The position numbers and the translations under genes were made by a program. From the IMG/VR virus record IMGVR_UViG_3300036766_000194, positions 62,001 through 126,000 of that record: a DNA stretch of 64,000 nt. One strand, written 5' to 3'. Shown here piece after piece: positions 12,101 to 31,569 of this stretch. The first letter of the stretch is position 1; each line of letters opens with the position of its first letter. Under the pieces are notes generated by a model that did no database searches, was not told where the DNA came from, and worked only from the letters and a program-made list of their open reading frames with translations.

Positions 12101-15100
12101 AGGATTTGAGCGTAATCTGAAGAATCAGGGTGGACTTAATCGTCAATGTCCAGTTTGTAGGGCGTTAGGAATGGACTCCCGTAAAAAATGGAAGGAACGT
12201 CAAGAAGAGATTCAAGTTGCTCCTCCGTCAGGTACCTATGGTCCCGACTATGTTCAAACTAGTAAGACTGCTTGTCTTGCTATGACTAAGAGTGCAGGGG
12301 TTGAACCAAGAATTACAACGCAAAAGAGTAGTGTGGATAATGAAGGACATGTACACTACGAAATTAGCATGGTTGACGAGAACGGGGATGATCTTGGATT
12401 CTTAAAGGTCATCGCCAAACCCAAGGGATCTCCAGGAGGAGATTACGAAGAACCGCATTTGAAGATTCACGAGATTTTTGTAGAAGAACATTCTCGCCGT
12501 AGAGGATATGGCACATTGTTATATCAAGCAGCACGGAATCTGGCACGACAGCTTGGCCTGCCAAATGTTTATTCAGACACTACTATCTCAGATGAAGCTC
12601 GTTTGGTTTGGGAAAATAAACTACCCGCAAAACGTTTTAAAGATAATAGAGGAACACCTATTCGTTACCGTATGAAGGCTTCCTCAAATGAATTCTACCA
12701 CGTCACTCGATATGAAAATGCGGCTAATATCTTGGAGCATAATTATTTCCGAACAACAACGGGACAAAATGTAAGAGGATTGTCTACGACAAAAGATCCT
12801 AACTACTGGTGGGGTAGTAAAGAAGTTCGTTTTGTTTTAGACAAACAAAAGCTGTCTGAAAAATACGAATTAAAAAGTGAAAACGAGACCATCTATACCG
12901 AAGGATCTCTTCTTAATGAAAACGAAGTTGTGGTGTTATTTGATTCTGCTATCTTGAATGCTAGAGATTACATCCTTAGAGTGGACTACTTTGAAGCTCC
13001 AGGGGAGCCAGAGTATGAAGACTTTATTTCACAATTGAAAGATGTAAAGTCTAGAAAAATTGGAAATGCTAAATTTGCTGCTTTGTCTACAGCCGAAAAG
13101 AAAATGGTTGATGATCAGAAACTATCTCAGGAATTCACCAAAAAGATTATTGAAATATTAGAAAACCTTCTTAAGAATTACAAATACACCTATCCTGAGG
13201 ATTGGGATAGACTAATTGTCAAAGAACTCAGGAAGAAATTGAATATTTCGGAACAAATTGCTTGGGATTTGGATGATATATTGACTGTTGCTTCATATCT
13301 GGATATATATTCTTACTTTACTGATAAGGGATTACAACTGGCTGGAATTGATCCCAAACTCGTAAAGAAACCAAAACGAGAAATTGAAGAAAGCAGCATG
13401 GGTGATCTTGAAGAGGAAGATAAGAAACTTTTAAAGATGACTTTTCATTCAGAACTTCTTCCCGTGAAGTATTTGTTGCACGGAACGTCTGACAAATTCA
13501 TAGCTGACATTAGAAAAAACGGATTACATGGTAAGAAAATTTATCTCACCACGACGTCAGAAATTGCTACCTCCGAAGCTGAGTATACTGTTGAGGGAGA
13601 TCCTTTTTCAGAAGGAAAGAATTGGGGTCAAATTTCTGGAGGAAAACCCATAGTAATTGTGATTGACCCTAAGAAGATTAAGTTGTCTCTTCGTCCTGAT
13701 CCTGAATATCTTGCTTCCATGAAGGAAGAGGGAGAGATTCCTTATGCTTTCTATACTCGACAGACTGTTCCTCCTTCTGCCATAATTAAGATTGTTTCTC
13801 TTGAGAATGCTGAAAAATATGGAGTGGACAAGAAACCTCCCACCTTAGAGATGATGAAGACCGCCGCTATAGGCTTAGAACAACTCAAACACGATTTTGA
13901 TAAGCGTCCTGCTCAGTTAGTGACAAAACAGGAAGTTTTAGATACGACATTTATCTTACCCGATGGAACTTCCCTAGGATTCTACGATCATCCAGAACGT
14001 GACCAAATCGTAGACGAGAAGAATATACAATTTAAAGATTTTTGTATCCGCACAGGGACTATCTGGTCTAAACGCAGGGAAGACATCTTTCATATATATA
14101 AGCGTCCTAATGATGCTCAGATGGATAGATTACATAAGATGTTTCAACTCAATGGAAGTCAACTGGGTTGGATTATTAACCGGGGTCCTGCTGCTCAAGA
14201 GATAAAGAAAGTTAAAAAGGGAGTTTGGAATAAATTTCTCCGTGAATTGGATATAGTGTATCAGACTGAGGACCGTAAGAAGAAATCATCTAGTAGTAAT
14301 GATTTTAGTGATTTAGTTGATCTTCATACTCAAATTCATAAACACCCGGCTAGAAGTGAGGACCATACTCCTAGTCATGCCCAATGGAGTAATTATGTTA
14401 AACAGTTAGAAAATTTCTATACTAGATTGAAATTGACAGGGGATGAATACTGTGACTGTAAAGAATTTCCTACAATGGGAATGTTTCGAAAAACTCATCC
14501 TCTGGTTACGGTTAAAAGTAATTTAGATAGATTAACCGATGAAGTAGACCACACCTATTCTGAAACAGCCCTTATGGGAATGCATTCATTTCTAACTCAT
14601 TTACAAGATAAACATAAAGACCGTGAGAAGACCAGCGCGTCCTCTTCATTTGATTCTTGGTTCATAGGTTCCAAAGTTGTAGACGCTCAAGGCAAACCCA
14701 TCATTTGTTATCACGGAACAAGCCAACCCTTTTCTCGAATAAACATGGGCAAAGGTTCGCAAGGAGTTTTCTGGGTCACATCAGATCGTTCCAAGATTGA
14801 GCGCGGCGGGGCTGGAGCCAGTTCCAACAAGCACATTCTAGGAATGTATGTCAACATCAAGAAGCCCGCTGGGTGGGATGAATACGAACGTCTTTCTTTA
14901 GGAGAACTGAAGCGTGACTATGATGGGGTTATTCTCCCCGAGGGAGATCATTTTGATGCCATTGTTTTTAAGCCTAACCAAGTCCGGATGGTAAAATCCG
15001 CTGCTACAGATCCTGATGCTTGGAATGAGGAACCTGAGTCTCTTCCTAAGGGAAAAGTAACAGGAGACATGATTAGAAAAGGTGCTTGGTTTCTACTGCC

Positions 15101-15773
15101 TGACGGTACCTGGTTTGGTGTCAGGGCAAGTGAGGCAGAGCACTCCTGGATAGAACACTTAGTCCCGGAAGGTTCCATACGTGTACCAAATGAAATGGTT
15201 TATGATATTTCTAGAAAACCCACAGAAGACCAGAAGCAGGAGATAGCAAGATTAGTGAATCAATCCTCTAGTTTAGTTATGTATTGGGACATTTATAAAG
15301 ATGGAGGGGAATATTCTGGTCAGGGTTCCTTAGGAGATTTTCTACGTTTCTTGAGTAAGATTTATGGTAAAACAGCCTCCTCATCCGAATTAAAACAGAA
15401 TCTTATGCGGTGGCGGGGTAATATCGCGGCCCGTGCTCAAAAAGTCTATGATGAATGGACCCAAAATGAAGAAGGAATAGATACCGAATATGGTGGTGGC
15501 GGACCCTGTGATGCTATAGCAGAACAGATACAAGATTTACTAGAAAGTCTAGGGGTCAACACGATGAGCGGGGGGCAAGAAGGTGACGATCATGCCTGGA
15601 TTATCGCCTATAATTACAAAACTGGTGAAGCCTGTGGAGTGGACATTCCTCATAGTGTATACGAAACTGGAGGGGGCTACTCCTGGAAGAAGATTCCTAA
15701 CGTAGTTTTCACCCCGAATGATGTAGAGATATGGCCCGTAGACATTAAGGACATAGAATATGAAGATCAGTAA
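9093..15773 (+). CDS. Giant polyvalent protein (~2226 aa): 2H phosphoesterase, zincin peptidases, GIY-YIG, GNAT and several ADP-ribosyltransferase-like domains
   Basis: HISL/HVTL (2H); HEVTH and HELCH (zincin/SprT); VYLLHF..PFKHARHYLG (GIY-YIG); RRRGYGTLLY (GNAT); FYHVT..STT, LLHGT..IYLT and CYHGT..FWVT (ART-like). ATG at 9093 overlaps the upstream stop. Confidence 0.85.
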   Translation: MPNKWNHASTQINLPPDVAEQVLTAGKNVPEEILSLNGRDDNPHISLKYGVEENEELLREAVKGIFPFTVTLGKTKTFLARDPYAGTPLVVEAAAPELAKLNKLIDKAIGNKPEDFSFEPHVTLAYIEEKHSAEYVGKDWLAGVTFTVDSIVLSKMNGEQVSIPLETKPEEEFRRHVPTHFSSRLLTAKLPDVDMKRFKRIIEPLRPRLIGKDDDEIAEILNETHEDTGVSYHLSTQESGHSEWAQNYLSGAFYVVGQGDIVVMLEYGIGNLFENITEEKWGYFVSVLSSLVVHEVTHDSQFAAIFHKYKGQSEPMERALKTMESGPEQGRAVYFSNLHELAAFARQAVEELRETHYTDEDISNLLRDSKVQKDAIGDSHVFYLYWDFFGPGDPIYKKFLYQMAKVIGTTHVASDESAYQAAADKFHIDYKGVAKDYTTPSNALIMYNDPVSGTSIGVFVAEFSEDKVKEHLNAARQRFNLPKVSGDTISTSQLECGWCKKVIREGTQPASHTICPECHKKYFPETLKKTSTKMYSGGRPGSGPGKIVTYFTPNKQMAESYVSLYNDRFGGGGELREADVNLIKPAPYEVIEAEAKKLGIDNTHYTPASIFDRNLHGEKMVGTLVKNLKDQGYDGTILDDIGYGVEIQDKAFIKFSYNKLSPNQPGKKYVEETNGWADQNEQSREGDEAYPELETLAPELFKESAVTSPLNAVQNSVNKFMTEFWPDLPKPKIKIINHTVPVSLGNCLWTSKDPDTSIIEIEKAVCGHQETLDRIVAHELCHHAEYINEIRKIPTDQIKIMNRLHGDHGKWWKAEADKVNNIYGQSYVTVKSDQSMVQEQDKEFYVLLKSSPYGIIWCYAVRPSLKQKLYINHQIPQGAKLVKTKDISLARNPGGTIGSGWRRPGTKEMAEKLSTLWNEVPSVKVYSLHNPLFKNAATDVIGQVYLLHFNEPFKHARHYLGWALDADRRIEQHRNGVGSRLTQVIKENEIGFEVARIWDNATRGFERNLKNQGGLNRQCPVCRALGMDSRKKWKERQEEIQVAPPSGTYGPDYVQTSKTACLAMTKSAGVEPRITTQKSSVDNEGHVHYEISMVDENGDDLGFLKVIAKPKGSPGGDYEEPHLKIHEIFVEEHSRRRGYGTLLYQAARNLARQLGLPNVYSDTTISDEARLVWENKLPAKRFKDNRGTPIRYRMKASSNEFYHVTRYENAANILEHNYFRTTTGQNVRGLSTTKDPNYWWGSKEVRFVLDKQKLSEKYELKSENETIYTEGSLLNENEVVVLFDSAILNARDYILRVDYFEAPGEPEYEDFISQLKDVKSRKIGNAKFAALSTAEKKMVDDQKLSQEFTKKIIEILENLLKNYKYTYPEDWDRLIVKELRKKLNISEQIAWDLDDILTVASYLDIYSYFTDKGLQLAGIDPKLVKKPKREIEESSMGDLEEEDKKLLKMTFHSELLPVKYLLHGTSDKFIADIRKNGLHGKKIYLTTTSEIATSEAEYTVEGDPFSEGKNWGQISGGKPIVIVIDPKKIKLSLRPDPEYLASMKEEGEIPYAFYTRQTVPPSAIIKIVSLENAEKYGVDKKPPTLEMMKTAAIGLEQLKHDFDKRPAQLVTKQEVLDTTFILPDGTSLGFYDHPERDQIVDEKNIQFKDFCIRTGTIWSKRREDIFHIYKRPNDAQMDRLHKMFQLNGSQLGWIINRGPAAQEIKKVKKGVWNKFLRELDIVYQTEDRKKKSSSSNDFSDLVDLHTQIHKHPARSEDHTPSHAQWSNYVKQLENFYTRLKLTGDEYCDCKEFPTMGMFRKTHPLVTVKSNLDRLTDEVDHTYSETALMGMHSFLTHLQDKHKDREKTSASSSFDSWFIGSKVVDAQGKPIICYHGTSQPFSRINMGKGSQGVFWVTSDRSKIERGGAGASSNKHILGMYVNIKKPAGWDEYERLSLGELKRDYDGVILPEGDHFDAIVFKPNQVRMVKSAATDPDAWNEEPESLPKGKVTGDMIRKGAWFLLPDGTWFGVRASEAEHSWIEHLVPEGSIRVPNEMVYDISRKPTEDQKQEIARLVNQSSSLVMYWDIYKDGGEYSGQGSLGDFLRFLSKIYGKTASSSELKQNLMRWRGNIAARAQKVYDEWTQNEEGIDTEYGGGGPCDAIAEQIQDLLESLGVNTMSGGQEGDDHAWIIAYNYKTGEACGVDIPHSVYETGGGYSWKKIPNVVFTPNDVEIWPVDIKDIEYEDQ

Positions 15774-15785
15774 TGAGGGTGTTTT

Positions 15786-16124
15786 ATGCTAAATAGATTC
15801 AGAGATTATTTGTATGGAGCGTTTAGTGACCACGGAGAGCCGTCTTGTAGTCGGTTCCTGATGGGTTTGTTTTCTGTGTTTACGGTTGGAATTTTGTGGA
15901 GAATCTTCAGCCACTTGCTAAAGATAAGCAACGATGGTAATGTCGCTGTGCTTAGCACTTGGTTAGGAAATCTTCCCTTTATCATTGCTGCGTTGTGCGC
16001 TCTTATCGCTCTACCTTATACAGTAAATCAGGGAACAGGTGCTATATCTAGCCTGGCAGGTATGGTGAGTGCGTATAAGGGAAATAAAAAATCTGATGCT
16101 GTAAGTCCTGACCCTAAAGTTTAA
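15786..16124 (+). CDS. Small two-TM membrane protein, holin-like
   Basis: Two hydrophobic helices and a charged C-terminus; GAGGG RBS. Confidence 0.5.
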   Translation: MLNRFRDYLYGAFSDHGEPSCSRFLMGLFSVFTVGILWRIFSHLLKISNDGNVAVLSTWLGNLPFIIAALCALIALPYTVNQGTGAISSLAGMVSAYKGNKKSDAVSPDPKV

Positions 16125-16470
16125 CAAAATAGATGTGGGCGGGAGTCCTTTCTACCCGCAAGCCTTGGCAATTGCCGCGTTATTCGGTCACTGCCCAACC
16201 AGGTCATGAACTCTGGCTGTTTAATGGCAGAGGAGATTGGTTACTCCCAACGGGATACAGCCGTAAGAATGATAGTTTTTACGATTTGTCCCGATCTTAC
16301 GAAGCTCAAGATTTGGCCTATCCTGGCTTGTTTAACCTTACACGGCGGATCGCTGTACCACAATCGGACAGTGCTTTTCAGCACCTCCAACTCTGCTATA
16401 TCTCCCGGCAGGAGATTATTCAGCCACCGCATCCATGTATATAATACTGGGAATTTGTGAAAATAACTGT

Positions 16471-17160
16471 TTACATTAAGCAGACGGGCATACCCCCACC
16501 AAATTTTACACCACCACTACTCTTGAAGGACACCGCAGCGCATGCCCAGAAGTCTGTCGTATTACCAAATGCTGTGGAGATGCTGCCCGAGGCTTTATTC
16601 AGGATGTATTGGGCGACGCCGATTACAGCAGGGTCTACTACCCCAAGTGTATACCCCGAACCAGCTGTACCTGTGTTGTTCTCCGTTGTCATCGCAACGA
16701 ATATTAAGTCCGTAGCAGTGGTGCTGAGATTGGCGGTAGTGGGGGTTGTGAGGGTGGCGGTATTGTGGTTCTGTATGGCGGTCACATCAACAGCACTAGT
16801 GGTAGCGACGCCAGAGAACTCATAGAGAGTGAAATCTACATCCGTGAAGGTAGACCCACCAGTAGCCCCCACGGTTGTGGTGGTTGACATAGCTGAGGCA
16901 TTTGCTATGTAGAATATTGTGGTTCTACCGAATGAAGTCCCAGTTGTGTCCGACCACGGTTCTGTTGTGGCAGAAGTCCAAGTAAATCCGCTGGTAACGG
17001 GAGTGGAGATTGAAACGGTGGAGTCACCGTCCGCGCAGGCAACCAATATAAGAAGGCTGCCCGCCGTCGTTGCGGAAGTATATCCCGCAGCAGTTGAGGT
17101 AGCCGATGATGCCCCGCTACCACTCCCACCAGCTTTAGATTGTACGAGTGCGATTGACAT
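16471..17160 (-). CDS. Thr/Ser/Gly-rich putative virion surface protein
   Basis: Low-complexity beta-rich composition; coupled to the upstream gene. Confidence 0.65.
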   Translation of the reverse strand: MSIALVQSKAGGSGSGASSATSTAAGYTSATTAGSLLILVACADGDSTVSISTPVTSGFTWTSATTEPWSDTTGTSFGRTTIFYIANASAMSTTTTVGATGGSTFTDVDFTLYEFSGVATTSAVDVTAIQNHNTATLTTPTTANLSTTATDLIFVAMTTENNTGTAGSGYTLGVVDPAVIGVAQYILNKASGSISTAFGNTTDFWACAAVSFKSSGGVKFGGGMPVCLM

Positions 17161-19214
17161 TAGCTATTATCCTCGGTCCATTCAAAGCTGACGGTTGCGG
17201 TCTGCGTAGCCACAACGGCACCAAGATTCACGCATAGCTGTTGAGCAGTTCCGCGCAAAACAACAGCGGAAGCTCCGCCACGCTCTCCAAATGTCCAGAA
17301 CCATGTATTCGCACCCGCTACTGTCGCTGATTCGTCAAAGAACTGGACTCCACGAATCGTTCCCACGGCTGCGCCCAGAGTCGGCGCGGCTGTGTAGGAG
17401 AGCGGAACAGAGGAAGCAGCGGAAAAACCAGAGTCATAGGGGACTGCTGTCATGGAAGCAGAGGTTCCGGCTGAGTCCGCTGCGGAACGCTTGATTAGCT
17501 GGACGGATTCCAAAGCCGCCGTACCTGTAGTGGAAAGCGATACCTCGACACGAGTTACCCGAACAGTCGTAGAGGCGTTACCAGGTAGGAGAGCAATGTC
17601 GCCCGCAACAGGAGTGAATGATGCGAAGCATGAGTAAGTTTTCTTGCGACCTTCAATGTTGACGTTTACGCCGCCCGTCGTATCGCACTGAACAGCCACA
17701 GCCTGTCCAGCGGTAAGGGCGGGAATAGTGGTCTGATAGACGGAAGAAATTGCCAACGCATTCGTAGGAGCGGTTGCTGCTCCTATGGTGGAGTCAAGAG
17801 TTGCCCCGGCGTTGCCAATGACTCTCGCTGTTCCAATAACCTTAGTGGTTTCAGCAGCCAGAGTAGCAGCAGCTTGAACAGCAAATGTCCCACCGTTACT
17901 TACGACCCAAGGAGAAGTTCCTTGATTGACTGTTCCAATAACCTTTGTGGTTTCAGCAGCCAGAGTAGCAGCTGTTACAGATCCAGCGTCAGTGACGCAA
18001 TGTAAATTGGTTCCTGTACCTTGAACGACTGTTGCGTTCAAACTAGCTGCCGTCGCCTGAGTTACAGCGATAGTCTGTGAAGCCGCTATTGTTGCCGTTA
18101 CGGGGAACGTAGATGCAGCATTACTGCGAACATATACATCGCCATCAGCTGCGGTTACGGCGGCTACTAGAGAACCAGAAGGATTGACTTTTACATCGAC
18201 GTACCCTCCCCCTCCCCCTGTTGTAACACCTGTGATAACACTATGAGTACAGAGTAGGTTATCGTCTCCGTTCAATCCTGTGTCCAAATCTTTTACAGTA
18301 GCTTGAACGACAGAAGGAATTAACAGCGTCTGTAGTCTAAAACTTGTCTGATTTGTCCCCCCATTGACGTAAACTACTCGCGCATACCGGGCATGAATAC
18401 CTGTGGCCAAACTAGCGGAAGAAGCAGCCGCTGCTGCTCCCGTAATTATGTGATCCCAGTTAGAGTTATCCGTAGAGAATTGAATCTGGAGTGTTCCCGC
18501 TACGTTAGAAAGAGATTGAACTTGTATACTTATATAGCCCAGCGTAACCAAGTCCATAGTTGTTCCGGTGAAGGTAGCACTAGCTAGCAAGGTAGCAGTT
18601 GTGCTATTCCCCGCGCTTACGACAGCAAAATTACCTGTGACTCCGTCTGAGACTAATATAGGACTAGAATTCTGAATATGAACGTTGAGTCCAGTTGTAG
18701 CAGGGGAGCCTTCTGTGGTGGAACTGAGTAGATTTCCCGTCCCATCAGAAGTTCTTACAACACCAATAACCTTAGTGGTTTCTGCGGTGAGAGTGGCTTG
18801 AACAGCGAATGTTCCTGAATTTGATACGACCCAAGGAGAAGTAGATTGGGTGACTCCTACCGTTCCAGTAATTGTGGTGGAAGTAAGCGTAACAGGTATA
18901 GCAGAAGCATTTTGAATATGAACATTTAATCCAGTTGTAACTGGGCTACCTTCATTGGTAGAAGACACAGCATTACCACTACCATCCTGGGTACGGACAA
19001 CCCACACTCCTGACTCAGTAACCGCCACTGTTCCTGTAACAACAGTTGTAGATCCCGAATCCGCAATGATATGACCGATTACGTTAATTCCAGAAGGGAT
19101 GGAAGCAATTTTAAGATTACCGTTGACGTCTAATTGGACCGCACTCATCTGACCATTTGTCAGCGTCGGCGGAGTGGTATTGTAGACGCCGTTGTTAAAG
19201 GGATTATAGCTCAT
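17160..19214 (-). CDS. Putative tail-fibre/virion decoration protein with internal repeats
   Basis: Repeats ATL(A/T)AETTKVIG x3, TSPWVVSN.GTFAVQA x2 and EGSP.TTGLNVHIQN x2. Confidence 0.7.
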   Translation of the reverse strand: MSYNPFNNGVYNTTPPTLTNGQMSAVQLDVNGNLKIASIPSGINVIGHIIADSGSTTVVTGTVAVTESGVWVVRTQDGSGNAVSSTNEGSPVTTGLNVHIQNASAIPVTLTSTTITGTVGVTQSTSPWVVSNSGTFAVQATLTAETTKVIGVVRTSDGTGNLLSSTTEGSPATTGLNVHIQNSSPILVSDGVTGNFAVVSAGNSTTATLLASATFTGTTMDLVTLGYISIQVQSLSNVAGTLQIQFSTDNSNWDHIITGAAAAASSASLATGIHARYARVVYVNGGTNQTSFRLQTLLIPSVVQATVKDLDTGLNGDDNLLCTHSVITGVTTGGGGGYVDVKVNPSGSLVAAVTAADGDVYVRSNAASTFPVTATIAASQTIAVTQATAASLNATVVQGTGTNLHCVTDAGSVTAATLAAETTKVIGTVNQGTSPWVVSNGGTFAVQAAATLAAETTKVIGTARVIGNAGATLDSTIGAATAPTNALAISSVYQTTIPALTAGQAVAVQCDTTGGVNVNIEGRKKTYSCFASFTPVAGDIALLPGNASTTVRVTRVEVSLSTTGTAALESVQLIKRSAADSAGTSASMTAVPYDSGFSAASSVPLSYTAAPTLGAAVGTIRGVQFFDESATVAGANTWFWTFGERGGASAVVLRGTAQQLCVNLGAVVATQTATVSFEWTEDNS

Positions 19215-19854: not shown

Positions 19855-20133
19855 TTATTCTGTCTCTCGGTGATTAGGATAATTGGGATAGCGATTCTTC
19901 AGGGCCCAAACGTACATCCAGCCAGCAACACATCCAATAGACAGATGAGCTAGACCCATTTTCAAATAGTGTTGGAGTTCTTCTGTCTCCATAGGACCTT
20001 CATTAGTCATGATGAAGAGTAAATTTAAGAATCCAGACAGCAGGCAGAATACAGACAAACTTAGAGTAATAAATCGTTGGATTTGAAAATTGAGAACGTC
20101 AACAACGGATTTGAACCTCTTCCATCTACTCAT
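19855..20133 (-). CDS. Small membrane protein
   Basis: Two hydrophobic segments; overlaps the upstream stop. Confidence 0.55.
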   Translation of the reverse strand: MSRWKRFKSVVDVLNFQIQRFITLSLSVFCLLSGFLNLLFIMTNEGPMETEELQHYLKMGLAHLSIGCVAGWMYVWALKNRYPNYPNHRETE

Positions 20134-21151
20134 CCCAATGATTCCATTCTATGCGACTACGCATCCAATGTCCGTGCGTTTGTACGTGATCTTTTCGAAC
20201 ATACTTGCCCACTCGGGTAGAAAATTCTTTTAAGTGAAATGACCCCGCAGGCCGCACAACGTAACCTTCCCACTTGTCAGAATTGAGGGAATATTGTTCT
20301 AGTATTTCGGGTGAAAAGTCTTCCCATTTCTTTCCATACCATCTTACCGGAACGGTTTGTAGACCGAGGAGTCCCGCATAATCTACTGTATCTTTCCAAG
20401 GGAGACAAGTCAAACCGTCCCAAATACTGAATACAAGAAAGAACGAAGGCAAATTCGAATAATATATGCTATGTTTGGCGGTAAGATTTTCACCACAAAT
20501 ACGCCAATTATTAGGAATGTCATGAGCAATACTAGCATGTAATGCTTTGACACGATCTCTTGATGAGTGCGCTTCATAATCCAGAGACCGAGCATGCATA
20601 TAGTCCCTGTACATGGTGGTATTTTCACCGTCCATTTTTTCGGTGACAACTACTTCGGTACCATTCCAGGTGTCTAAGATTTCTTCAGACAATTCTCGGT
20701 CGTCTTCCTTCATTCCGGGGGACCAAGGAAAATGCCAAGTACGAGGATATTTTACACGATTAAGAAACAAATGTCGTACAGGTTCAAGAACTTTCTGCAC
20801 AGATTCATCGTCATAAAGTTCTCCCTTCAAGCGTAAGCCATTTGTTAAGACAGGGTTGCCCCACTTGTCATAGGGCTGGTCCGGATAAAGATGTGGGGGT
20901 AGAATGGTGTTTTTAATTCCAGCTACGGCGCGAATTTCATCGGTTGCTAAGTCTGTTGCTTCAGCTGCTAGATGACATTTGCCACAGAGAGTTGCTCCGT
21001 TTTCAGAGTAATATCCCCCATCAGGGAATAGTCTACGTTCCATAATATGATGAGCATCTTGCCCCGGCTGGCCGCAAACCACACATTTGTGATTATCCCT
21101 CGCGAAGACTCCTTCGCGGAACTGATCACGTGTTAGGAGGCCTAATCCCAT
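20126..21151 (-). CDS. HNH nuclease-RNA ligase fusion
   Basis: RD.HKCVVC...AHHI....NGATLC..CH (HNH); KYPRT.H.PWSPG, TEKMDGEN (motif I), GEN and EGYVVR (ligase). Confidence 0.85.
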   Translation of the reverse strand: MGLGLLTRDQFREGVFARDNHKCVVCGQPGQDAHHIMERRLFPDGGYYSENGATLCGKCHLAAEATDLATDEIRAVAGIKNTILPPHLYPDQPYDKWGNPVLTNGLRLKGELYDDESVQKVLEPVRHLFLNRVKYPRTWHFPWSPGMKEDDRELSEEILDTWNGTEVVVTEKMDGENTTMYRDYMHARSLDYEAHSSRDRVKALHASIAHDIPNNWRICGENLTAKHSIYYSNLPSFFLVFSIWDGLTCLPWKDTVDYAGLLGLQTVPVRWYGKKWEDFSPEILEQYSLNSDKWEGYVVRPAGSFHLKEFSTRVGKYVRKDHVQTHGHWMRSRIEWNHWDE

Positions 21152-21495: not shown

Positions 21496-21861
21496 TCATA
21501 CGTGTTGCTGAATTGACAATATCTTTATCTCTTTTGTGGTAGAGAGAATGGTAAATTTTTGGGGAACGAGTTTGTTAATAAAGTCAACATATTCTAAGGG
21601 AGCCTCAGCATTCAGATAAGGACGAGGCTTACAGAAGAAACGATTACGAGTATTTGTAGGCGGGTGTACCACTGTGTTAAAACCCAACATCCACGCGGTC
21701 TCATTTATTTGAGCAGCACCTACACAATCTCCATGATGGAATTCTCCTCTATCAAAAGCGTTAAAAGAAGACTCCAATATGTCTTGTAATAGTCTACGCA
21801 CGGAGATTTTTGTTCTGGGGTCATTCCTATCAACTCTTAATTTTAAGGAATAATTTCTCAT
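21496..21861 (-). pseudogene. Decayed DprA/Smf-like Rossmann-fold phage gene (EFHHGDCVGA family)
   Basis: Recognisable HHGDCVGA..HPP..PYL, but the expected GMTPEQ lies in another frame (5-T run at 21807-21811) and expected downstream segments are missing. Confidence 0.5.
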
Positions 21862-22661
21862 TTCATATCTCTGTTAATAACGAGTTGGTCCGCTGTGCAC
21901 GAAGTAGCCTTTTTATCGTCACGTTTTCGCAACATAACAGGTTGGACAATGTGAAGATTTTTAGTTGAATAAAGGTATTGTACTTCCACAACATCACCCG
22001 GACGCACTCTTGTTCTTCCAATAAGACTTACACCACTCACCCGGTGTAACCTATCCCTATTGAATACTCCAATTTCAACACTGTTTTTCCCTTCCGCAGA
22101 AGGTCCAATAACTACAAAGTCGGCAGACTTCCAAAATTTCCACTTATAGTGCTGTCCCGCCCGTCCTTCCTTGTATACAGCATACTTATTCTTGAAGACG
22201 ACTCCCTCGGCATTTTCCGCATGTAGCTTTTTAATGAGGGCAAGTTTTTCCTTATAGGTCCATGCAGTCTTGAGAACATTGACCATAGGATGAAAATTAC
22301 CGAATTCCTCATGAAGACGTTCTTCGCGGTAGCGGTATTCTTCCGGTGCCAGAGCTTCATTGTTAAGGATAAGGGCGTCAAACCCGCTGTAAAAGGGGGA
22401 AAGTACGGTTCCTTCCAATTCACCATCAATGACAAAACGAGGGAGAGGATGATTCAAAAGAACAGAGACTAATTTACGAGGAAGATCTCTTTTTTCGCCT
22501 TCACGGTTGAAACAGAATACAGAACTTTTTTCGCGAACGATTACACGCCGCTTTCCATTACGTTTTTCCTGCGCTCCAAAACTACCATTACCCAACAATT
22601 TAGTGGCGACTTCATTCAGAGTCACCGCCGTTAAAAGTTCCGCTTTGAATTGAAAGTCCAT
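21858..22661 (-). CDS. Compact ATP-dependent DNA ligase
   Basis: QEKRNGKR (motif I), IDGEL, FDAL, EGVVFK and KWKF, followed by an OB-fold. Start placed at MDFQ; an in-frame GTG at 22751 is also possible. Confidence 0.8.
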   Translation of the reverse strand: MDFQFKAELLTAVTLNEVATKLLGNGSFGAQEKRNGKRRVIVREKSSVFCFNREGEKRDLPRKLVSVLLNHPLPRFVIDGELEGTVLSPFYSGFDALILNNEALAPEEYRYREERLHEEFGNFHPMVNVLKTAWTYKEKLALIKKLHAENAEGVVFKNKYAVYKEGRAGQHYKWKFWKSADFVVIGPSAEGKNSVEIGVFNRDRLHRVSGVSLIGRTRVRPGDVVEVQYLYSTKNLHIVQPVMLRKRDDKKATSCTADQLVINRDMK

Positions 22662-22832
22662 AAAAAGTGTTAGAGATTCGGGCCACAACGGGGCAGCTTC
22701 AATCTCTATGAATATTCTACTTGATAGGACCAGAAAAAGGTTAGCGATCACGTTTGACGATAAAGCCTAATAGGAATGCCCAGATTACGACGATGCCAGT
22801 TCCTATTTTCGCCACATGTTACATGGCGGGAA

Positions 22833-24010: not shown

Positions 24011-24457
24011 TTATCCTTTCAGCAAGGGAAGATAGTCGGTGATCCCGACCACGTCTTCCGGGAGTACAGGATGGGTGGCAATAGCGGTGATAACTCTTCC
24101 CGGTCCGTATTCCGGGTTGTCATCCATGAAGTATTCAACCTTGATGTCCGCTTCCTGTAAAAGATCGTACACATGGGCAAGTTCCAGACTGTCACGGCAC
24201 TGAAGAACAATCGTGGTGATAGGTTCCCAGGCTTGTTCCAGATTTTTCTTGTTCTTGGAAAAAGTCATATCCAGCGCCATATTGACGCGGACCTTGCTAA
24301 CCACGTGAGCAACTTGGGCAACCTGGCGTCCCAGGGGCTGAACAGTAGTCTTACTTTCCGGAGTAAGACGAATGAATCCTTCTTCAGTAACCTTAACAGG
24401 ATTCTGAACGGTGCTCGCCACAACAACGTAGATGCGATGTTTGTCGTATTTATTCAT
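24011..24457 (-). CDS. Peptidyl-tRNA hydrolase, PTH2 family
   Basis: GRQVAQVAH, TIVL and (F)MDD.PE....T..A pattern. Confidence 0.7.
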   Translation of the reverse strand: MNKYDKHRIYVVVASTVQNPVKVTEEGFIRLTPESKTTVQPLGRQVAQVAHVVSKVRVNMALDMTFSKNKKNLEQAWEPITTIVLQCRDSLELAHVYDLLQEADIKVEYFMDDNPEYGPGRVITAIATHPVLPEDVVGITDYLPLLKG

Positions 24458-24959: not shown

Positions 24960-25815
24960 TTATGCCGCCTTACGCTTGGCCCTGGCGACGGAGTTCATAA
25001 GAGCCACCATCACATCGGTGGTATCTTCCACGGTGGTTTCAGTACTGGGCATTCTCGTTGAACTCTTCGGTCATCGCTTCGATTAACTGTTCGGCAAGTT
25101 CCGCTTCCTGTACATTCGCAGCAGGAAGATCGTTAGTCTTGTCGAAGGCACGAACTTCGTACCCAAAAAGCAAGTCACTGGCGACGATGGTGGTGGTGTT
25201 GAAGGGGCGCAAAATCAGCCACTGTTCACGACCGCGAGTACTACGCTTTGCCAGCGCCACGGTACTGGTTCCCAACATTCCCTCCAGAAGAAGAGCGTAG
25301 CCGCGCTGAGAGTCAGCCTTGGACTTTTTGTTCTCTCCCTCCGTGCCCAGGAACTCGGTCTTGCCAAAGTAGATGGGGTCAATCTCGTTAGACTTAACGA
25401 AGCGAACGATTTCCAAAATCTTGTCGTTGGCAGGCTCACACGCTTCCAGTTCTTCCCTGGACTGTTCGTCCTTTTCAACGTTCGTATCGCAATGCTCACA
25501 CCATTGGTTACTAAAACGAACTTGTCTCCTTCGTACTGAAAACCCCATCGCACCCTGCTTCAAACGAGTGCCGCAAGAAGTGTGAACGGTATTGAACTCC
25601 ACCTTGCCTTCCTTGATGGCGGTGTAGGTACCGACCGGGAAGGTCAGACCACCGAATTCCAGAGTACCCTTCCAGCCAACGCGAACGGCGAAGGTCTTCT
25701 CAGCAGGAGAGAAGGCTTCCACAACAACCTGGGGCTTGGTGTTCAGTGCGGCGGACAACGTGACAATCTTATCTTCTTTACTAACTTCAACTTTCACGGT
25801 TTTGGTTTTTGCCAT
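24960..25815 (-). pseudogene. ku: Ku (NHEJ) protein gene with an internal block swap and a frameshifted C-terminus
   Basis: WKGTLEFGGLTFPV.TY, EIDPIYF, and GY.LL...M....VA.......R. The GFQYEGDKFVLVT segment is displaced and out of frame; the Ku-like tail DVMVALMNSV..KRKAA is in another frame after a TGA at 25039. Confidence 0.85.
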
Positions 25816-25844
25816 GGCAACGTTCCTCCACAAGTATTCTACTG
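25813..25844 (-). promoter_or_regulatory. Promoter-RBS cassette CAGTAGAATA-N3-GTGGAGGAACGTTGC before ku
   Basis: Shared with the cassette in front of rIIA. Confidence 0.65.
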
Positions 25845-25861
25845 GCTGTTTTTCAAAAAAG

Positions 25862-26113
25862 TTAATCGATATCGAATTCGATTACTTCCCAGTCTCCGTA
25901 CACCAACATGGTGCCTTTCATTGTGGGATAATCAAAAGCGCAGAGGTTAAAAGGCTCTTTTACTCCCCTCTGCATATTTTTACAACCCATGATGCCTGGC
26001 TGTTGCAAAGCATAAGCAATGGCAGCATGTTTATGGGTAGTGATGCCAACGATTTTCATAGGGCCGCGTCCCTCGGTCATATCTGCGTTTGCCCTAATCA
26101 TATAGATTAGCAT
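25862..26113 (-). CDS. Hypothetical protein
   Basis: IR.N.DMTEGRGPM motif, 83 aa. Confidence 0.65.
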   Translation of the reverse strand: MLIYMIRANADMTEGRGPMKIVGITTHKHAAIAYALQQPGIMGCKNMQRGVKEPFNLCAFDYPTMKGTMLVYGDWEVIEFDID

Positions 26114-26231
26114 GCTATCATTGCCAACTAAACCACTTCACCCAATGAATTCTATCACGAATACACCGAACCATGTTTTCAAATCATACCATCTCCAAAA
26201 GAAAAGGCCCAGTATTATCTGGGCCTATGTT

Positions 26232-27383
26232 TTACTCTTCAGACTCACGATTACGCCGAACCTTGATAAGTTCAATGGCTTCGATGTAGCGGTCTACGGT
26301 GGTCTGGCGCAGGCTGTTGGAACGTTCGGCTGCCCATACTGCCTTGTAACTCAGATCCAGTTCCTCAGAGATTTCTTTGAGGCTGATGCCTGCCTGTTCG
26401 CGAATCACGCGGAGCGTGTTCTGGAACAGTTTAGACTGTTCAGCCGGGGAAAGCGGATGAGGGAGACGATTCCAAAACTTGGCAAGTTGCCCATAGTTCC
26501 ATTTGCGGATGCTCTTGTCACGCCACTTACCACGATAGATGGCACGCTTCACGGTCTTGTGGTTAAGGATGTTTTCCAGGAGCGTCTTGCGCTCCTTGGC
26601 AACCGGAACCACACTGACCAGCATGGACGGATGATCCAGACTTCCGTCAAAACCATTACGGTTGTCTGAGATTTCCTTGACTACTTCGTAACGCCAAGTG
26701 CGACCCTTAGCAAAGTTGTAGTCCGGAGGAATGCTCACGACGTCCTTGGGGTTAATCTTAACCTGCATCAACCGCCCCCCGCTACCATACGTGCTGCTCA
26801 GGTAGCTCACTGAACAAAAATGGAACCCCCGCGAACAGGTTTCTTGACGATTAGAGTCAACATCCGAACGTTTCATTACCAGGACTTGACCGGGGCTGTT
26901 GTCGAACTTGCTCGTGTGGCAATCGGTGTAATCCTGATTGACCATCTTATAGGCCATAAAACAGCCATCATCCGTGATAGGAAGATCGTTCTTGCTTAGG
27001 AAGTCAAAGAGTTCACTGATAGCCTGGTCACTCGGGTTGCTGTAGAGGTTATCCATGAACTTGAGCATATAGTCCATTGGATAATTTTCCTTGAGCATAT
27101 AGGTGATGCGGCGGGTCAAACTGCTGTCAACCTCGCGGCTCTTGTAATAGACTCCCCCGCGATTGACGGTAACAGCGCCGTGACTCTTGTTAGAGACCAC
27201 TGCCGCTATGGTGACCAAATGGGGAACCTTACTCCAACGCTTGGCAATCAGGGCCGAACGCAGTTCTTCAAACGTGGGATGGGTCTCGTTCAAACTGAAC
27301 GGGCGACCGTCCACCACCAAGCTGATATAGGTATCGTTCACCGTGAAGGGATAGGGTGCTTTCTTTGTTTTGGTTGCGCTCAT
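26232..27383 (-). CDS. rIIB: rIIB-like protein with C-terminal XRE-type HTH
   Basis: ELFDFL....LPITDDG.F.AYK, DN.PGQ...M.R..VD....TCS.GFH; C-terminal LR.IRE.AGISLKEISEEL.LS...V..AE. Confidence 0.85.
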   Translation of the reverse strand: MSATKTKKAPYPFTVNDTYISLVVDGRPFSLNETHPTFEELRSALIAKRWSKVPHLVTIAAVVSNKSHGAVTVNRGGVYYKSREVDSSLTRRITYMLKENYPMDYMLKFMDNLYSNPSDQAISELFDFLSKNDLPITDDGCFMAYKMVNQDYTDCHTSKFDNSPGQVLVMKRSDVDSNRQETCSRGFHFCSVSYLSSTYGSGGRLMQVKINPKDVVSIPPDYNFAKGRTWRYEVVKEISDNRNGFDGSLDHPSMLVSVVPVAKERKTLLENILNHKTVKRAIYRGKWRDKSIRKWNYGQLAKFWNRLPHPLSPAEQSKLFQNTLRVIREQAGISLKEISEELDLSYKAVWAAERSNSLRQTTVDRYIEAIELIKVRRNRESEE

Positions 27384-29674
27384 GACTGGACCGTCTCCTC
27401 TACGGTCGTAATTCTGATGTTGCTGTTGTTCTCATGTTCATCCATGTTTTTTACATATTCCAGTAGCTTCTCACTCATTCTACTGTTGTGACTATAATAA
27501 GAGTTAAAACTTAGGGTAAGAATAGGGTAATGAGTGTTAACCATCTCATTCCACAAGGCAGAAAAATCTATAGCGTGTTCCACTTTGAATTTTCCTGCCT
27601 GTTTTGCTACGCTCACAACTTCCCACAAATACTCCCCCTCATCACTCCCGTCCTGTTTATTCCACAGAGTTACAAACTGGAACATAGGACTGTTCAAATC
27701 CAGAGTATTTTTCTTGTTAGCATAATCCAAGAAATCTTCAAAATCGTTGTTGAACAGCTTGACCCTGTGGCTGAGTTTCATCTGTTTTTCCGCCGTCATG
27801 ACAATGGGGATCCTCTTCAAAATCTGAGGGATAAGTTCCGTCCACTGACCGTCGCCCATCTTCGGCAACTTTGTACCCTTCTTAATACCGTAAACCGGAG
27901 TATGTTGGGTAAGACCGAAAGCCTTGCTACCCCGGACGACTGAAATGTAGTCCACGAAAGCAGACCCGTTATAAAAAGGAATTTCAGCCACCGGGCAAAG
28001 AGTAGTGAAGTTCTCCACCCACACAAAGTACTTCTCTCCGGAGGGAAGTTCGCTAGAGAAGATTTTCTTCCAAGTCCTGCTCCAGCCTTTACCATATTGA
28101 GAGCGACCGTTGCCGCTCATGACTAAAAGTCCCCGGCGCGGTCCAGTAGCTTGGCCCGGCATACGTTCGTCAAGTTCGGGGTACTTTGCCTTGAGTTCAG
28201 ACATCTTGATGATCGGAACGCCACACATCTTGAGGTAGATGGCTTCAAATTCCTTCATCATATCTTCATGAGAAGAGTTTTTGTCATAGCGGCTGAACAA
28301 GTATACTTTCTTGAACCGATTCACACCACCGTCATCACCCTGGATGAACTGATGAAGATATTTCTCTCCACCAAACTTGATGTCATTGACAACGAAGGCA
28401 ACAGTGGGTTGTACGCTAAACTCTATGTCGTACTTCGTCAAAATGCTCGTGTTCTGGAGGGCCTCCACCTCAATACGCTCACGAACGTCGGGAGCACGCT
28501 TGGTGAAAAGGTTATGCTTCGTGGCCCACTTGGTTCCGCCGCTCTTGGAGAAAACGGAAAGCATCGTGTGGTGATAGTCCAACTCGTTTATGAAGGGAAG
28601 GTCTTTTTCTAAAGTAAAGTTGGAGTACTTCTTGTAGATTTTGCCCTCGTTAATAGCTGACTGAACCACCCCCTGTGTGGATCCGTCCGCCAGCATACTG
28701 AAAATCAAGAGTCGTGCTTCCCACTCCGTTTTGCAGTTTTCAATACGTTCCACGATTTCTTCCATCATCCGGGAGTAAATAGTGGTGAGTTCGGTAAGGA
28801 TAGCATCAATAGTAGTCTCGTCGTTACTGAGCATTTCACGCGATGCGGCAACGGACAATGAACCGATAGGAAAGAAAATGTCCAGAGGTTTTTCACTCAG
28901 TTTACGTTGTTCAGAGGACAGACGGCTGATGTCAAGGTTACCGACAGAGTATTGAACCACACCCATAATAGCGCGGATGCCGCTCGTATGGTGGGTGGGA
29001 GCCAGAGCACGCATACCCCAGCGGTCGGTCTTGATGGAGTAGTTTTGCTGCCGAACTTCAAATCCTTTAACATTAATGTTGGGAAGCGGGTTGAAGAACT
29101 CCAAAGCCACCCGAGCCATGTTCTCAAATTCCCAGCAATCCTGTGACTTGACTGGGAACTGAACTTCGAGACCGTTAACTTCATCGGTCTTATGGCTAGA
29201 CAAACGCTTGACGGAAGGTGTACCGTCGTTCTCAATGTAGGCGGAATAGATGTACTTCTTCCCGTTCCAAAAGGTGGTAACGGTAAAACCATCGGTGTAG
29301 CAAAACGGGGACTTAGACCCCAGACCCATTGCGCCAATCATGGTGTTGTCGTTGTTCTTTGTTGAGGAAAAATAGGTACAATACAAAGTTTCAATCTCTT
29401 CCGGAGCCAGACCAATACCATAGTCTCGGATAGCGAACCAGGGTTCAAAACTCGTGGGCAGGTGAAGGTCGAACGGAACCTCAGCCTTGCCCGCCGCGAT
29501 ATGGGCGTCATAGGCATTACAAGAGAGTTCCCGAACGATAGCGAGAGGTTTGTTGTTATACAGCTTGGAAGACAAAACAGCGAACGCCGCTCCAGAGGCT
29601 TGAATCTGGAACTTTTTAGGGGCGGAATTCGTTCCGCCCGAAATCATGGGTGAGCCTTTGCGAGCGATTTTCAT
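27380..29674 (-). CDS. rIIA: rIIA-like protein (GHKL/HATPase N-terminus)
   Basis: LY.NKPLAIVREL.CNA.DAH, IRDYGIGL, STK, GLGSKSPF.Y and S.SRE.LS; adjacent to rIIB. Confidence 0.88.
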   Translation of the reverse strand: MKIARKGSPMISGGTNSAPKKFQIQASGAAFAVLSSKLYNNKPLAIVRELSCNAYDAHIAAGKAEVPFDLHLPTSFEPWFAIRDYGIGLAPEEIETLYCTYFSSTKNNDNTMIGAMGLGSKSPFCYTDGFTVTTFWNGKKYIYSAYIENDGTPSVKRLSSHKTDEVNGLEVQFPVKSQDCWEFENMARVALEFFNPLPNINVKGFEVRQQNYSIKTDRWGMRALAPTHHTSGIRAIMGVVQYSVGNLDISRLSSEQRKLSEKPLDIFFPIGSLSVAASREMLSNDETTIDAILTELTTIYSRMMEEIVERIENCKTEWEARLLIFSMLADGSTQGVVQSAINEGKIYKKYSNFTLEKDLPFINELDYHHTMLSVFSKSGGTKWATKHNLFTKRAPDVRERIEVEALQNTSILTKYDIEFSVQPTVAFVVNDIKFGGEKYLHQFIQGDDGGVNRFKKVYLFSRYDKNSSHEDMMKEFEAIYLKMCGVPIIKMSELKAKYPELDERMPGQATGPRRGLLVMSGNGRSQYGKGWSRTWKKIFSSELPSGEKYFVWVENFTTLCPVAEIPFYNGSAFVDYISVVRGSKAFGLTQHTPVYGIKKGTKLPKMGDGQWTELIPQILKRIPIVMTAEKQMKLSHRVKLFNNDFEDFLDYANKKNTLDLNSPMFQFVTLWNKQDGSDEGEYLWEVVSVAKQAGKFKVEHAIDFSALWNEMVNTHYPILTLSFNSYYSHNSRMSEKLLEYVKNMDEHENNSNIRITTVEETVQS

Positions 29675-31051: not shown

Positions 31052-31291
31052 GTGAAAACTCCATTGCCTGTACAAGTAGGAACAACTCTGGACAGGGATG
31101 CTGACGTTTATTATGTCTGGCGTCGCAACGACGGATATGTTGCTGCTTCTGTTGGTCGTATGCCGACTCGTTGGGTCGGTGATGACGGTTCCGTCACTAC
31201 TTTCGAGGAACTTGGTCAGTATACTGATTGGAATTTGGCGTACCGACGAATTCTTGATGAAAATGCTGCGAGGCCTTATCAAGCATACTGA
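31052..31291 (+). CDS. Hypothetical protein
   Basis: GAGGAG RBS with GTG start; 3' end lies inside a duplication. Confidence 0.55.
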   Translation: MKTPLPVQVGTTLDRDADVYYVWRRNDGYVAASVGRMPTRWVGDDGSVTTFEELGQYTDWNLAYRRILDENAARPYQAY

Positions 31292-31325
31292 TTGGAATTT
31301 GGCGTACCGACGAATTCTTGATGAA
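31221..31325 (+). repeat. 41-nt exact direct repeat (31221-31261 and 31285-31325)
   Basis: ATACTGATTGGAATTTGGCGTACCGACGAATTCTTGATGAA twice, 64-nt period. Confidence 0.9.
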
Positions 31326-31569
31326 CGTGCTGCGTGCTGCGACTGACTCCGGTCATCAAACCTGCTACTGTCCCGATTGCGGTCATCAGTGGTCACAACA
31401 TGAAATCAATGAAAACTGTGTAAAAACCGAAGAGGGTGTTCGTTGCGGTTGACCTTAATATCTTCCCTGTATCTTTGTCATTCTTGCTTTTGTTGTCTTA
31501 TTATCGTGACCCTAGTTTTTAGAGTTCAGATGATTCGTAAATCTATTGAAGATAGGAAAGAAAAGATCT

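What the first reader, a model, noticed from the sequence alone, without database searches (positions are those of the whole stretch)
25457..25545. Ku gene has a precise 42-nt block swap that hides a conserved segment out of frame
Seen: the ORF reads RLKQGAM-GFSVRRRQVRFSNQ-WCEHCDTNVEKDEQSR-EELEA. Moving the 42 nt at 25504-25545 to the far side of the adjacent 47 nt (25457-25503) gives RLKQGAM-WCEHCDTNVEKDEQS-RGFQYEGDKFVLVTK-EELEA, the canonical Ku CxxC...KG(Y/F)xY..(Y/F)V.VT.EEL bridge. No base is lost. The native flanks of the moved block share CCA(G/A)GG microhomology. Inference: excision and nearby re-insertion by end joining, a programmed permutation switch, or a mis-assembly.
Basis: seen in the sequence. 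Interest (0 to 1): 0.7.

Follow-up and report, generated by a model that had tools for sequence, protein, structure and literature searches.

The report
Scrambled, truncated Ku gene in jumbo phage
The Ku DNA-end-binding gene of this 300-kb phage really has two neighbouring pieces of 42 and 47 bases in swapped order. It also has a frame-breaking deletion, so it is most likely a broken gene copy in this strain and neither an assembly error nor a programmed switch.

Summary
On the minus strand, Ku (25815..25039) carries the 42-nt block 25504-25545 upstream of the 47-nt block 25457-25503.

- **Relative has the normal order.** A strain that is 99-99.9% identical in the flanks has the canonical order, with the 42-nt block (40/42 identical) downstream. 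There the block is flanked by a perfect CCAAGG direct repeat.
- **The swap is in the reads.** An independent k=31 assembly of the probable source run gives one 4.7-kb contig at depth 36.7, the same as its neighbours. It matches the window exactly across all junctions. That run shows no canonical-order contig; the canonical allele sits in a different sample.
Eighty nt near the 3' end are replaced by 6 nt. This shifts the frame and cuts off about 55 C-terminal residues, and the last 25 codons survive out of frame.
- **Ku is a hot spot.** It holds 5 structural differences in about 1 kb, against 12 in 44 kb elsewhere. Its point divergence is 5-8 times that of the flanks.

Best reading: a fixed, complex, inactivating mutation (replicative template switching, or duplication followed by deletion) in a gene this strain can do without. 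A programmed switch and a mis-assembly are not supported. Interest is low to moderate.

The parts
25039..25815 (-). Ku open reading frame as it now stands: 258 aa, ATG at 25815, stop codon at 25041-25039. Intact relatives have 297-313 aa.
   Evidence: ORF table. Pfam Ku 5e-23. Alignment with P0002-P0005.
25504..25545 (-). Block A, 42 nt. In its proper frame it encodes GFQYEGDKFVLVT, a conserved beta-hairpin. Here it lies 47 nt upstream of its canonical place and is read out of frame as GFSVRRRQVRFSNQ.
   Evidence: The hairpin is strands 102-109 and 112-115 in the model of the intact relative.
25457..25503 (-). Block B, 47 nt, the CxxC segment (WCEHCDTNVEKDEQS plus 2 nt). It is still in frame but now follows block A. 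Its first three bases are TGG, where the relative has CGC.
25451..25457 (-). The emptied canonical site of block A. It reads CCAGGG here; the relative has CCAAGG, then 42 nt, then CCAAGG.
   Evidence: One search reports 'skips 42, both=3'.
25038..25043 (-). Second lesion: 6 filler bases (ACTGAA on the gene strand) replace 80 nt of the relative. The net loss of 74 nt shifts the frame, and a stop follows at once.
   Evidence: One search reports 'skips 80, letters between ACTGAA'.
24960..25037 (-). Out-of-frame remnant of the Ku C-terminus, TTVEDTTDVMVALMNSVARAKRKAA plus its stop. It matches the relative's last 25 residues apart from one K to R change.
25007..25037 (.). A 31-nt exact direct repeat of G000:207572-207602, which lies inside an unrelated 384-aa ORF in another frame. 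One edge of the repeat coincides with the deletion junction.
   Evidence: The relative strain has 30/31 at the distant site.
25723..25728 (-). A 6-nt insertion (GTTGTT, adding two valines) relative to the close relative.
   Evidence: It is also seen at low depth in run X2.
25817..25818 (-). A 2-nt insertion (GC) just upstream of the ATG, relative to the close relative.

Best explanation
The window holds a real, population-fixed, damaged allele of a jumbo-phage Ku gene.

The ancestor had the canonical gene, as the 99%-identical sister strain still does. In that gene a 42-nt segment encoding a conserved beta-hairpin (GFQYE..KFV.VT) was lost from its native site, where it was bracketed by CCAAGG direct repeats. 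A copy now sits 47 nt upstream, out of frame. A second event replaced 80 nt near the 3' end with 6 nt, which shifts the frame and removes about 55 C-terminal residues.

The junctions show 0-3 nt of microhomology and short filler (TGG, ACTGAA). This is the signature of illegitimate events, and it does not fit homologous or site-specific recombination. Candidate routes are template switching during replication or repair, a duplication followed by microhomology-mediated deletion, or end joining.

The product lacks the hairpin and the C-terminal helices, so it is most likely non-functional, and Ku is dispensable for this strain.

Shown: the swap, the deletion, the canonical state in the relative, support from reads through an independent assembly, and the clustering of changes in Ku. 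Inferred: loss of function and the mutational route.
For: - Canonical order and full length in the closest relative and in all more distant Ku proteins, including solved B. subtilis and M. tuberculosis Ku.
- Block A is 40/42 identical to the relative's copy, and CCAAGG repeats flank it there.
- An independent k=31 contig of the probable source run matches the window with 0 differences at depth 36.7, equal to its neighbours. Laid on the canonical sequence, it shows the three jumps of the swap and the 80-nt skip with filler.
- The canonical allele is held by another sample, X3.
- The C-terminal remnant is present out of frame.
- Ku holds 5 structural differences in about 1 kb, against 12 in 44 kb of strain comparison elsewhere. 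My Poisson estimate for this is p about 1e-5.
- Ku has 7 point differences, all nonsynonymous, at 1.0% density against 0.12-0.2% in the flanks.
- AlphaFold: the intact relative scores pLDDT 82 with block A as a confident hairpin. The window protein drops to pLDDT 38-64 over residues 70-130 and loses those strands.
Against: - Only assembled contigs could be laid, not raw reads, so a minority of canonical-order genomes in the source sample cannot be excluded.
- Loss of function is inferred from conservation and structure models, not measured. The ORF is still 258 aa and scores as Ku over its remaining parts.
- The 5-8-fold excess of point changes in Ku is more than relaxed selection alone predicts, because the flanks already show nonsynonymous:synonymous of about 1.6:1. 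Something else contributes: import of a more diverged allele, locally error-prone repair, or earlier positive selection.
- Only two alleles are known, so no intermediate documents the route.
Confidence: 0.8

Rival explanations
1. Assembly artefact: the true genome has the canonical order and the assembler shuffled the blocks.
For: The record is a metagenome assembly. A 31-nt repeat does break the k=31 graph at 25007-25037.
Against: A second assembler with a different k reproduces every junction, with 0 differences over 25008-26200 and at full depth. No repeat of 31 nt or more lies inside or next to the swapped blocks. The run shows no canonical contig. Upstream alleles of the window type also occur in a second run, X2.
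Confidence: 0.03
2. Programmed or reversible permutation switch: the phage toggles Ku between an ON (canonical) and an OFF (swapped) order.
For: The swap is base-exact and length-neutral. Both orders exist in nature in genomes that are 99% identical.
Against: The two orders were found in different samples and were not seen mixed. There are no recombination sites beyond a 6-nt repeat and no recombinase hit among the neighbours. The two states differ by extra substitutions at the junctions and inside the block. The swapped allele also has an irreversible frameshifting deletion, so switching back would not restore Ku. No known site-specific system transposes a 42-nt block by 47 nt in direct orientation (my knowledge).
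Confidence: 0.02
3. Still-functional or neo-functional Ku variant: the shortened protein keeps or changes its activity, for example end binding without ligase recruitment, and the changes are adaptive.
For: The ORF stays open for 258 aa and matches Pfam Ku positions 2-188. All 7 point differences are nonsynonymous (one-sided p about 0.04 against the flanks, my arithmetic). The strain is abundant, at about 35x.
Against: The lost hairpin carries the most conserved motif of the family, KGYE..YV, in the 46-sequence consensus. The model of the window protein is disordered over residues 70-130. The C-terminal helices, conserved from phage to Mycobacterium Ku, are out of frame. An open frame after an adjacent-block swap is automatic and is not evidence of selection.
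Confidence: 0.1
4. Scars of repeated targeted breakage. Host nuclease or CRISPR cutting inside Ku would select escape mutants repaired by error-prone end joining or template switching. This would explain the clustering of rearrangements, fillers and point changes in one gene.
For: An 18-fold local excess of structural changes and a 5-8-fold excess of substitutions are confined to about 1 kb. Filler is present at two junctions. The 6-nt filler plus 3 flanking bases is the reverse complement of a 9-mer inside block A (p 0.03-0.09).
Against: No spacer or nuclease site was identified and the host is unknown. The 9-mer match is marginal. A mosaic import of an older, already decayed allele explains the same island of divergence, and another mosaic tract lies 8 kb away.
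Confidence: 0.05

Closest known systems
Bacterial Ku of the two-component NHEJ system (B. subtilis YkoV, M. tuberculosis Ku; PDB 9vnq, 8v53, 9i91)
   Same: The intact relative's protein aligns over its whole core and C-terminal region (E 1e-23 to 1e-25). The order is the same: H..C...CxxC, then KGYEY..YV..T.EEL. The window protein still matches PF02735.
   Different: The window allele has the hairpin block displaced and out of frame, and the C-terminus is frameshifted. This phage lineage has a ~45-aa N-terminal extension that bacterial Ku lacks. No LigD primase-polymerase is encoded in the phage.
Phage Ku-like end-binding proteins (Mu Gam; mycobacteriophage Corndog/Omega Ku)
   Same: [quoted passage not shown] Corndog and Omega Ku recruiting host LigD for genome circularisation is from my memory, not checked here. 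The gene here sits among end-healing and sealing genes: an ATP-dependent ligase-like ORF, an RNA ligase, PNKP in the relative, and PTH2.
   Different: This is a 300-kb phage with direct terminal repeats, not a cos or Mu-type genome. The role of Ku in it is unknown. In this strain the gene appears to be broken.
Complex indels and templated insertions from replicative template switching or microhomology-mediated repair; circular permutation by duplication plus deletion
   Same: Short-range relocation of a block in direct orientation. Junctions have 0-3 nt of microhomology and 3-6 nt of filler. A flanking 6-nt direct repeat lies at the emptied site. The filler may have been copied from nearby sequence.
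   Different: No intermediate (a duplicated state) was found, so the route is inferred. The block lands out of frame, so the result is not a functional protein permutation.

Membership tests
Ku (PF02735, prokaryotic Ku/YkoV type) | Significant match to the Ku beta-barrel core profile | tested here: met
   82.3 bits against a cut-off of 25, residues 54-240. 77 bits on the genome scan.
Ku (PF02735, prokaryotic Ku/YkoV type) | Collinear core: CxxC loop followed by the KG(Y/F)xY..(Y/F)V hairpin and the EEL helix in one frame | tested here: not met
   The hairpin-coding block lies upstream of the CxxC block and out of frame. The feature is met in the relative P0002.
Ku (PF02735, prokaryotic Ku/YkoV type) | C-terminal helical extension (conserved D(L/V)M.AL..S motif) after the core | tested here: not met
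   The frame is lost at 25038-25043. The remnant at 24960-25037 is out of frame.
Ku (PF02735, prokaryotic Ku/YkoV type) | Homodimeric ring that binds DNA ends | not testable with these tools
   Only monomer models were made. This needs biochemistry.
Complete two-component NHEJ (Ku + LigD) | A LigD with a primase-polymerase domain encoded alongside Ku | tested here: not met
   PF21686 is absent from the 299,875-bp genome. Only a 297-aa ATP-dependent ligase-like ORF lies three genes away.
Programmed DNA rearrangement switch (invertase, shufflon or phase-variation type) | Both configurations co-exist in one population | tested here: not met
   Only the swapped form appears in run X1 and the canonical form is held by X3. 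Contigs cannot exclude a rare form.
Programmed DNA rearrangement switch (invertase, shufflon or phase-variation type) | Specific recombination sites at the block borders and a nearby recombinase | tested here: not met
   Only 6-9-nt chance-level repeats were found. No recombinase domains in the neighbouring ORFs.
Pseudogene / decaying allele | An intact orthologue in a very close relative, plus at least one frame-disrupting lesion and accumulation of further changes | tested here: met
   P0002 is intact at 99% flank identity. The window has the swap plus a net 74-nt loss, 5 structural differences in 1 kb, and 7 of 7 nonsynonymous changes.

The most novel reading that the evidence does not exclude
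The Ku lesions may be one visible product of an unusually active short-range and ectopic template-switching (copy-choice) process in this jumbo-phage lineage. The same genome carries several exact 23-31-nt copies at unrelated sites, including a 31-nt Ku fragment inside another gene whose edge coincides with the Ku deletion junction. It also carries a 256-nt ectopic patch that replaces 27 nt of the sister strain. If so, the locus would record a mutational signature of the phage's own replication or repair machinery, possibly linked to loss of its Ku.
Probability: 0.12. Interest if true: 0.55.

Novelty: new member of a known kind. Interest (0 to 1): 0.3.

Why it matters
This is mainly a matter of correct annotation. 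The gene should be flagged as a disrupted Ku, and the 258-aa product should not be used as a representative of phage Ku.

It also gives a clean natural example of an adjacent-block swap with base-level resolution, an intact sister allele and read support. That is useful as a test case for complex-indel callers and for thinking about how permuted genes arise.

It shows as well that Ku is dispensable for at least one abundant strain of a 300-kb sediment phage.

If the template-switching reading were true, it would point to an error-prone repair mode in jumbo phages.

Tried and rejected
- **GenBank phage searches.** The Ku gene and a 12-kb stretch found nothing.
- **IMG/VR scans.** Scans for Ku relatives and for the block sequence found nothing beyond the withheld own record. 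The single metagenome scan found only the one sister contig. So only two alleles are known and there is no intermediate.
- **Ribosomal frameshifting as a rescue.** Rejected, because recoding cannot reorder segments.
- **Gene conversion from the distant 31-nt copy as the source of the deletion filler.** Rejected. That copy is flanked by TTCAG, not CTGAA, on the relevant side, and the copy predates the strain split.
- **Templating of the 6-nt filler from block A.** The 9-mer inverted match is only marginal, p 0.03-0.09.
- **Where the lost sequences went.** The 80 deleted bases and the relative's extra 18 bases have no copy elsewhere in the genome.
- **StyI-type (CCWWGG) cutting at the CCAAGG repeats.** Considered, but the insertion site has no such site.
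- **A-specific (DGR-like) mutagenesis.** The seven substitutions show no such pattern.

Full report
**Setting**

The window is positions 62,001-126,000 of a 299,875-bp IMG/VR virus record with direct terminal repeats, that is, a jumbo phage. It has no near relative among GenBank phages. On the minus strand, an ORF from the ATG at 25815 to the stop at 25039 (258 aa) is a Ku protein (PF02735, 82 bits against a cut-off of 25).

Nearby ORFs on the same strand:
- a PTH2-like hydrolase (24011-24457);
- a 297-aa ATP-dependent ligase-like ORF (21858-22751);
- an HNH plus RNA-ligase ORF (20126-21151).

The sister strain also has PNKP, endonuclease VII and a T4 Rnl1-like gene upstream. The genome has no LigD primase-polymerase.

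The gene strand reads ...GAM, then 42 nt (25545..25504) translated as GFSVRRRQVRFSNQ, then 47 nt (25503..25457) translated as WCEHCDTNVEKDEQS, then REELEA. In another frame the 42 nt read GFQYEGDKFVLVT.

The database holds one close relative, P0002 (313 aa), on three assemblies. It reads GAMRCEHCDTNVEKDEQSKGFQYEEDKFVFVTKEELEA in a single frame. This is the order found in all other Ku proteins, including the solved B. subtilis and M. tuberculosis structures.

In the DNA alignment the relative has the 42 nt (40/42 identical) after the 47-nt block, bracketed by two perfect CCAAGG copies. The window has CCAGGG at the emptied site and TGG instead of CGC at the start of the 47-nt block.

The swap is therefore real, exact to within 3 nt, and cannot be a chance resemblance.

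**It is not an assembly artefact**

Four sediment-metagenome runs hold parts of the region. In X1, the probable source, Logan's k=31 assembly contains a 4,701-nt contig of depth 36.7. It equals window 25008-26200 with no differences or gaps, and neighbouring contigs have depth 33.5-34.5.

Laid on the canonical sequence (L007), the same contig is reported as 'skips 47', 'goes back 86 with TGG between', 'skips 42' and 'skips 80 with ACTGAA between'. X1 shows no canonical-order contig.

Other runs:
- X2 holds window-type alleles just upstream at depth 2.3 but does not cover the swap.
- The canonical stretch is held in full by X3, a different sample.

Limit: contigs, not raw reads, were available, so a rare second form in X1 cannot be excluded.

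**A second, more damaging lesion**

Near the 3' end, 80 nt of the relative are replaced by 6 nt (window 25038-25043). This net loss of 74 nt shifts the frame and gives a stop at 25039-25041. The last 25 codons of the relative's Ku survive, out of frame, at 25037..24963, with their stop codon at 24962..24960.

The window protein therefore lacks about 55 C-terminal residues. These residues are conserved from the phage relatives to Mycobacterium Ku.

Further differences within the gene:
- a 2-nt insertion before the ATG;
- a 6-nt insertion, GTTGTT;
- an 18-nt stretch present only in the relative.

**Ku is a hot spot between the two strains**

Outside Ku, 16.7 kb of L002 and 27.6 kb of a second sister-strain contig (G001) are 99.1-99.9% identical to the genome. 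Together they hold 10 small indels and 2 larger replacements. The ~1 kb of Ku holds 5 structural differences. The expectation is about 0.27, so Poisson p is about 1e-5 by my arithmetic.

Point differences in Ku outside the swap number 7, and all are nonsynonymous. That is a density of 1.0%, against 0.12-0.2% in the flanks, where nonsynonymous:synonymous is 46:29.

The excess is larger than relaxed selection alone would give. Other possible contributors are import of a more diverged allele (a mosaic tract with 1.7% divergence lies 8 kb away), local error-prone repair, or earlier positive selection. I cannot separate these.

**Consequences for the protein (inferred)**

In an AlphaFold model of the intact relative (mean pLDDT 82), block A forms a confident beta-hairpin (strands 102-109 and 112-115) leading into helix 118-123. 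Its KGYE..YV motif belongs to the family consensus.

The model of the window protein (mean pLDDT 74) falls to 38-64 over residues 70-130. It loses those strands and lacks the two C-terminal helices. The 14 nonsense residues also widen the spacing within the H..C...CxxC cluster.

I conclude the product is most likely inactive. This was not measured.

**How it arose (inferred)**

- There are no recombination-site-like repeats; only 6-9-nt matches were found.
- No recombinase domain appears in the neighbours.
- The junctions have 0-3 nt of microhomology and 3-nt and 6-nt fillers.

This fits illegitimate events. Candidates are template switching during replication or repair, a duplication of the block followed by loss of the native copy through the CCAAGG repeats, or mis-joining of ends. 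No intermediate allele is known, so the route stays open.

Two curiosities:
- The filler ACTGAA with 3 flanking bases is the reverse complement of a 9-mer inside block A. The match is only marginally significant, p 0.03-0.09.
- The deletion junction coincides exactly with one edge of a 31-nt exact repeat. Its other copy lies 120 kb away inside an unrelated 384-aa ORF. The sister strain has that copy too, at 30/31, so it is older than the deletion.

**Comparison with known systems**

By sequence the gene belongs to prokaryotic-type Ku. The lineage, with relatives at about 50% identity (P0003-P0005), has a ~45-aa N-terminal extension. Phage Ku-family proteins are known: Mu Gam (PMC1378119), and Corndog and Omega Ku from my memory.

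The allele in this window fails two structural criteria of the family, a collinear core and an in-frame C-terminal extension. It is best filed as a disrupted member.

A programmed switch is rejected for four reasons:
- the two orders were found in separate samples;
- there is no recombination machinery;
- the two states differ by extra substitutions at the junctions and inside the block;
- the frameshift is irreversible.

**Verdict**

The finding is a neat, well-documented natural mutation in a dispensable phage gene, of low to moderate interest.

Noticed in passing
window 25007-25037 and G000:207572-207602 (outside the window): A 31-nt exact direct repeat with unrelated flanks. One copy is the Ku C-terminal coding sequence. 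The other lies inside a 384-aa ORF, read in a different frame. The sister strain has 30/31 at the distant site. One edge of the repeat coincides with the Ku deletion junction.
   Followed up: partly
window 31089-31344: About 256 nt replace 27 nt of the sister strain (L002:3688-3714). The segment is an inverted copy (246 nt exact) of G000:236261-236506 and holds an internal 41-nt tandem-like repeat. It is an ectopic patch or a small mobile segment.
   Followed up: partly
window 27114-29311: A 2,198-nt stretch is absent from the sister strain L002. It covers most of a 764-aa ORF with a weak HATPase_c match and the start of the neighbouring 383-aa HTH/DUF7666 ORF. A third assembly has an rIIB-like gene here instead, so the region upstream of Ku is a variable cassette site.
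   Followed up: partly
G000:202269-202525 and 241088-241344 (outside the window): A 257-nt perfect inverted repeat. The sister-strain contig G001 joins the two flanks across it in the other orientation. This implies either a ~39-kb inversion between the strains or a repeat-induced assembly join.
   Followed up: no
G000: 187763/192085, 118784/284584 (the first is window 56784), 3011/5632, 43329/182009: Further isolated exact repeats of 23-29 nt whose flanks are at random-level identity. Far fewer than one such pair is expected by chance in 300 kb.
   Followed up: partly
window 14959-17900: A mosaic tract with about 1.7% divergence from the sister strain (51 substitutions in about 3 kb, plus 6- and 11-nt indels). 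The surrounding sequence differs by 0.1-0.2%.
   Followed up: no
window 25820-25850; G000:33175, 91679, 92047 and 99358: A recurring motif upstream of genes (GCAACGTTCCTCCAC...TTCTACT on the complement). It also precedes Ku and is probably a phage promoter or leader element.
   Followed up: no
G000:1-226, 1016-1241 and 299749-299875: The terminal repeat region holds an extra internal copy: 226 nt repeated 1 kb in, and 127 nt shared with the far end.
   Followed up: no
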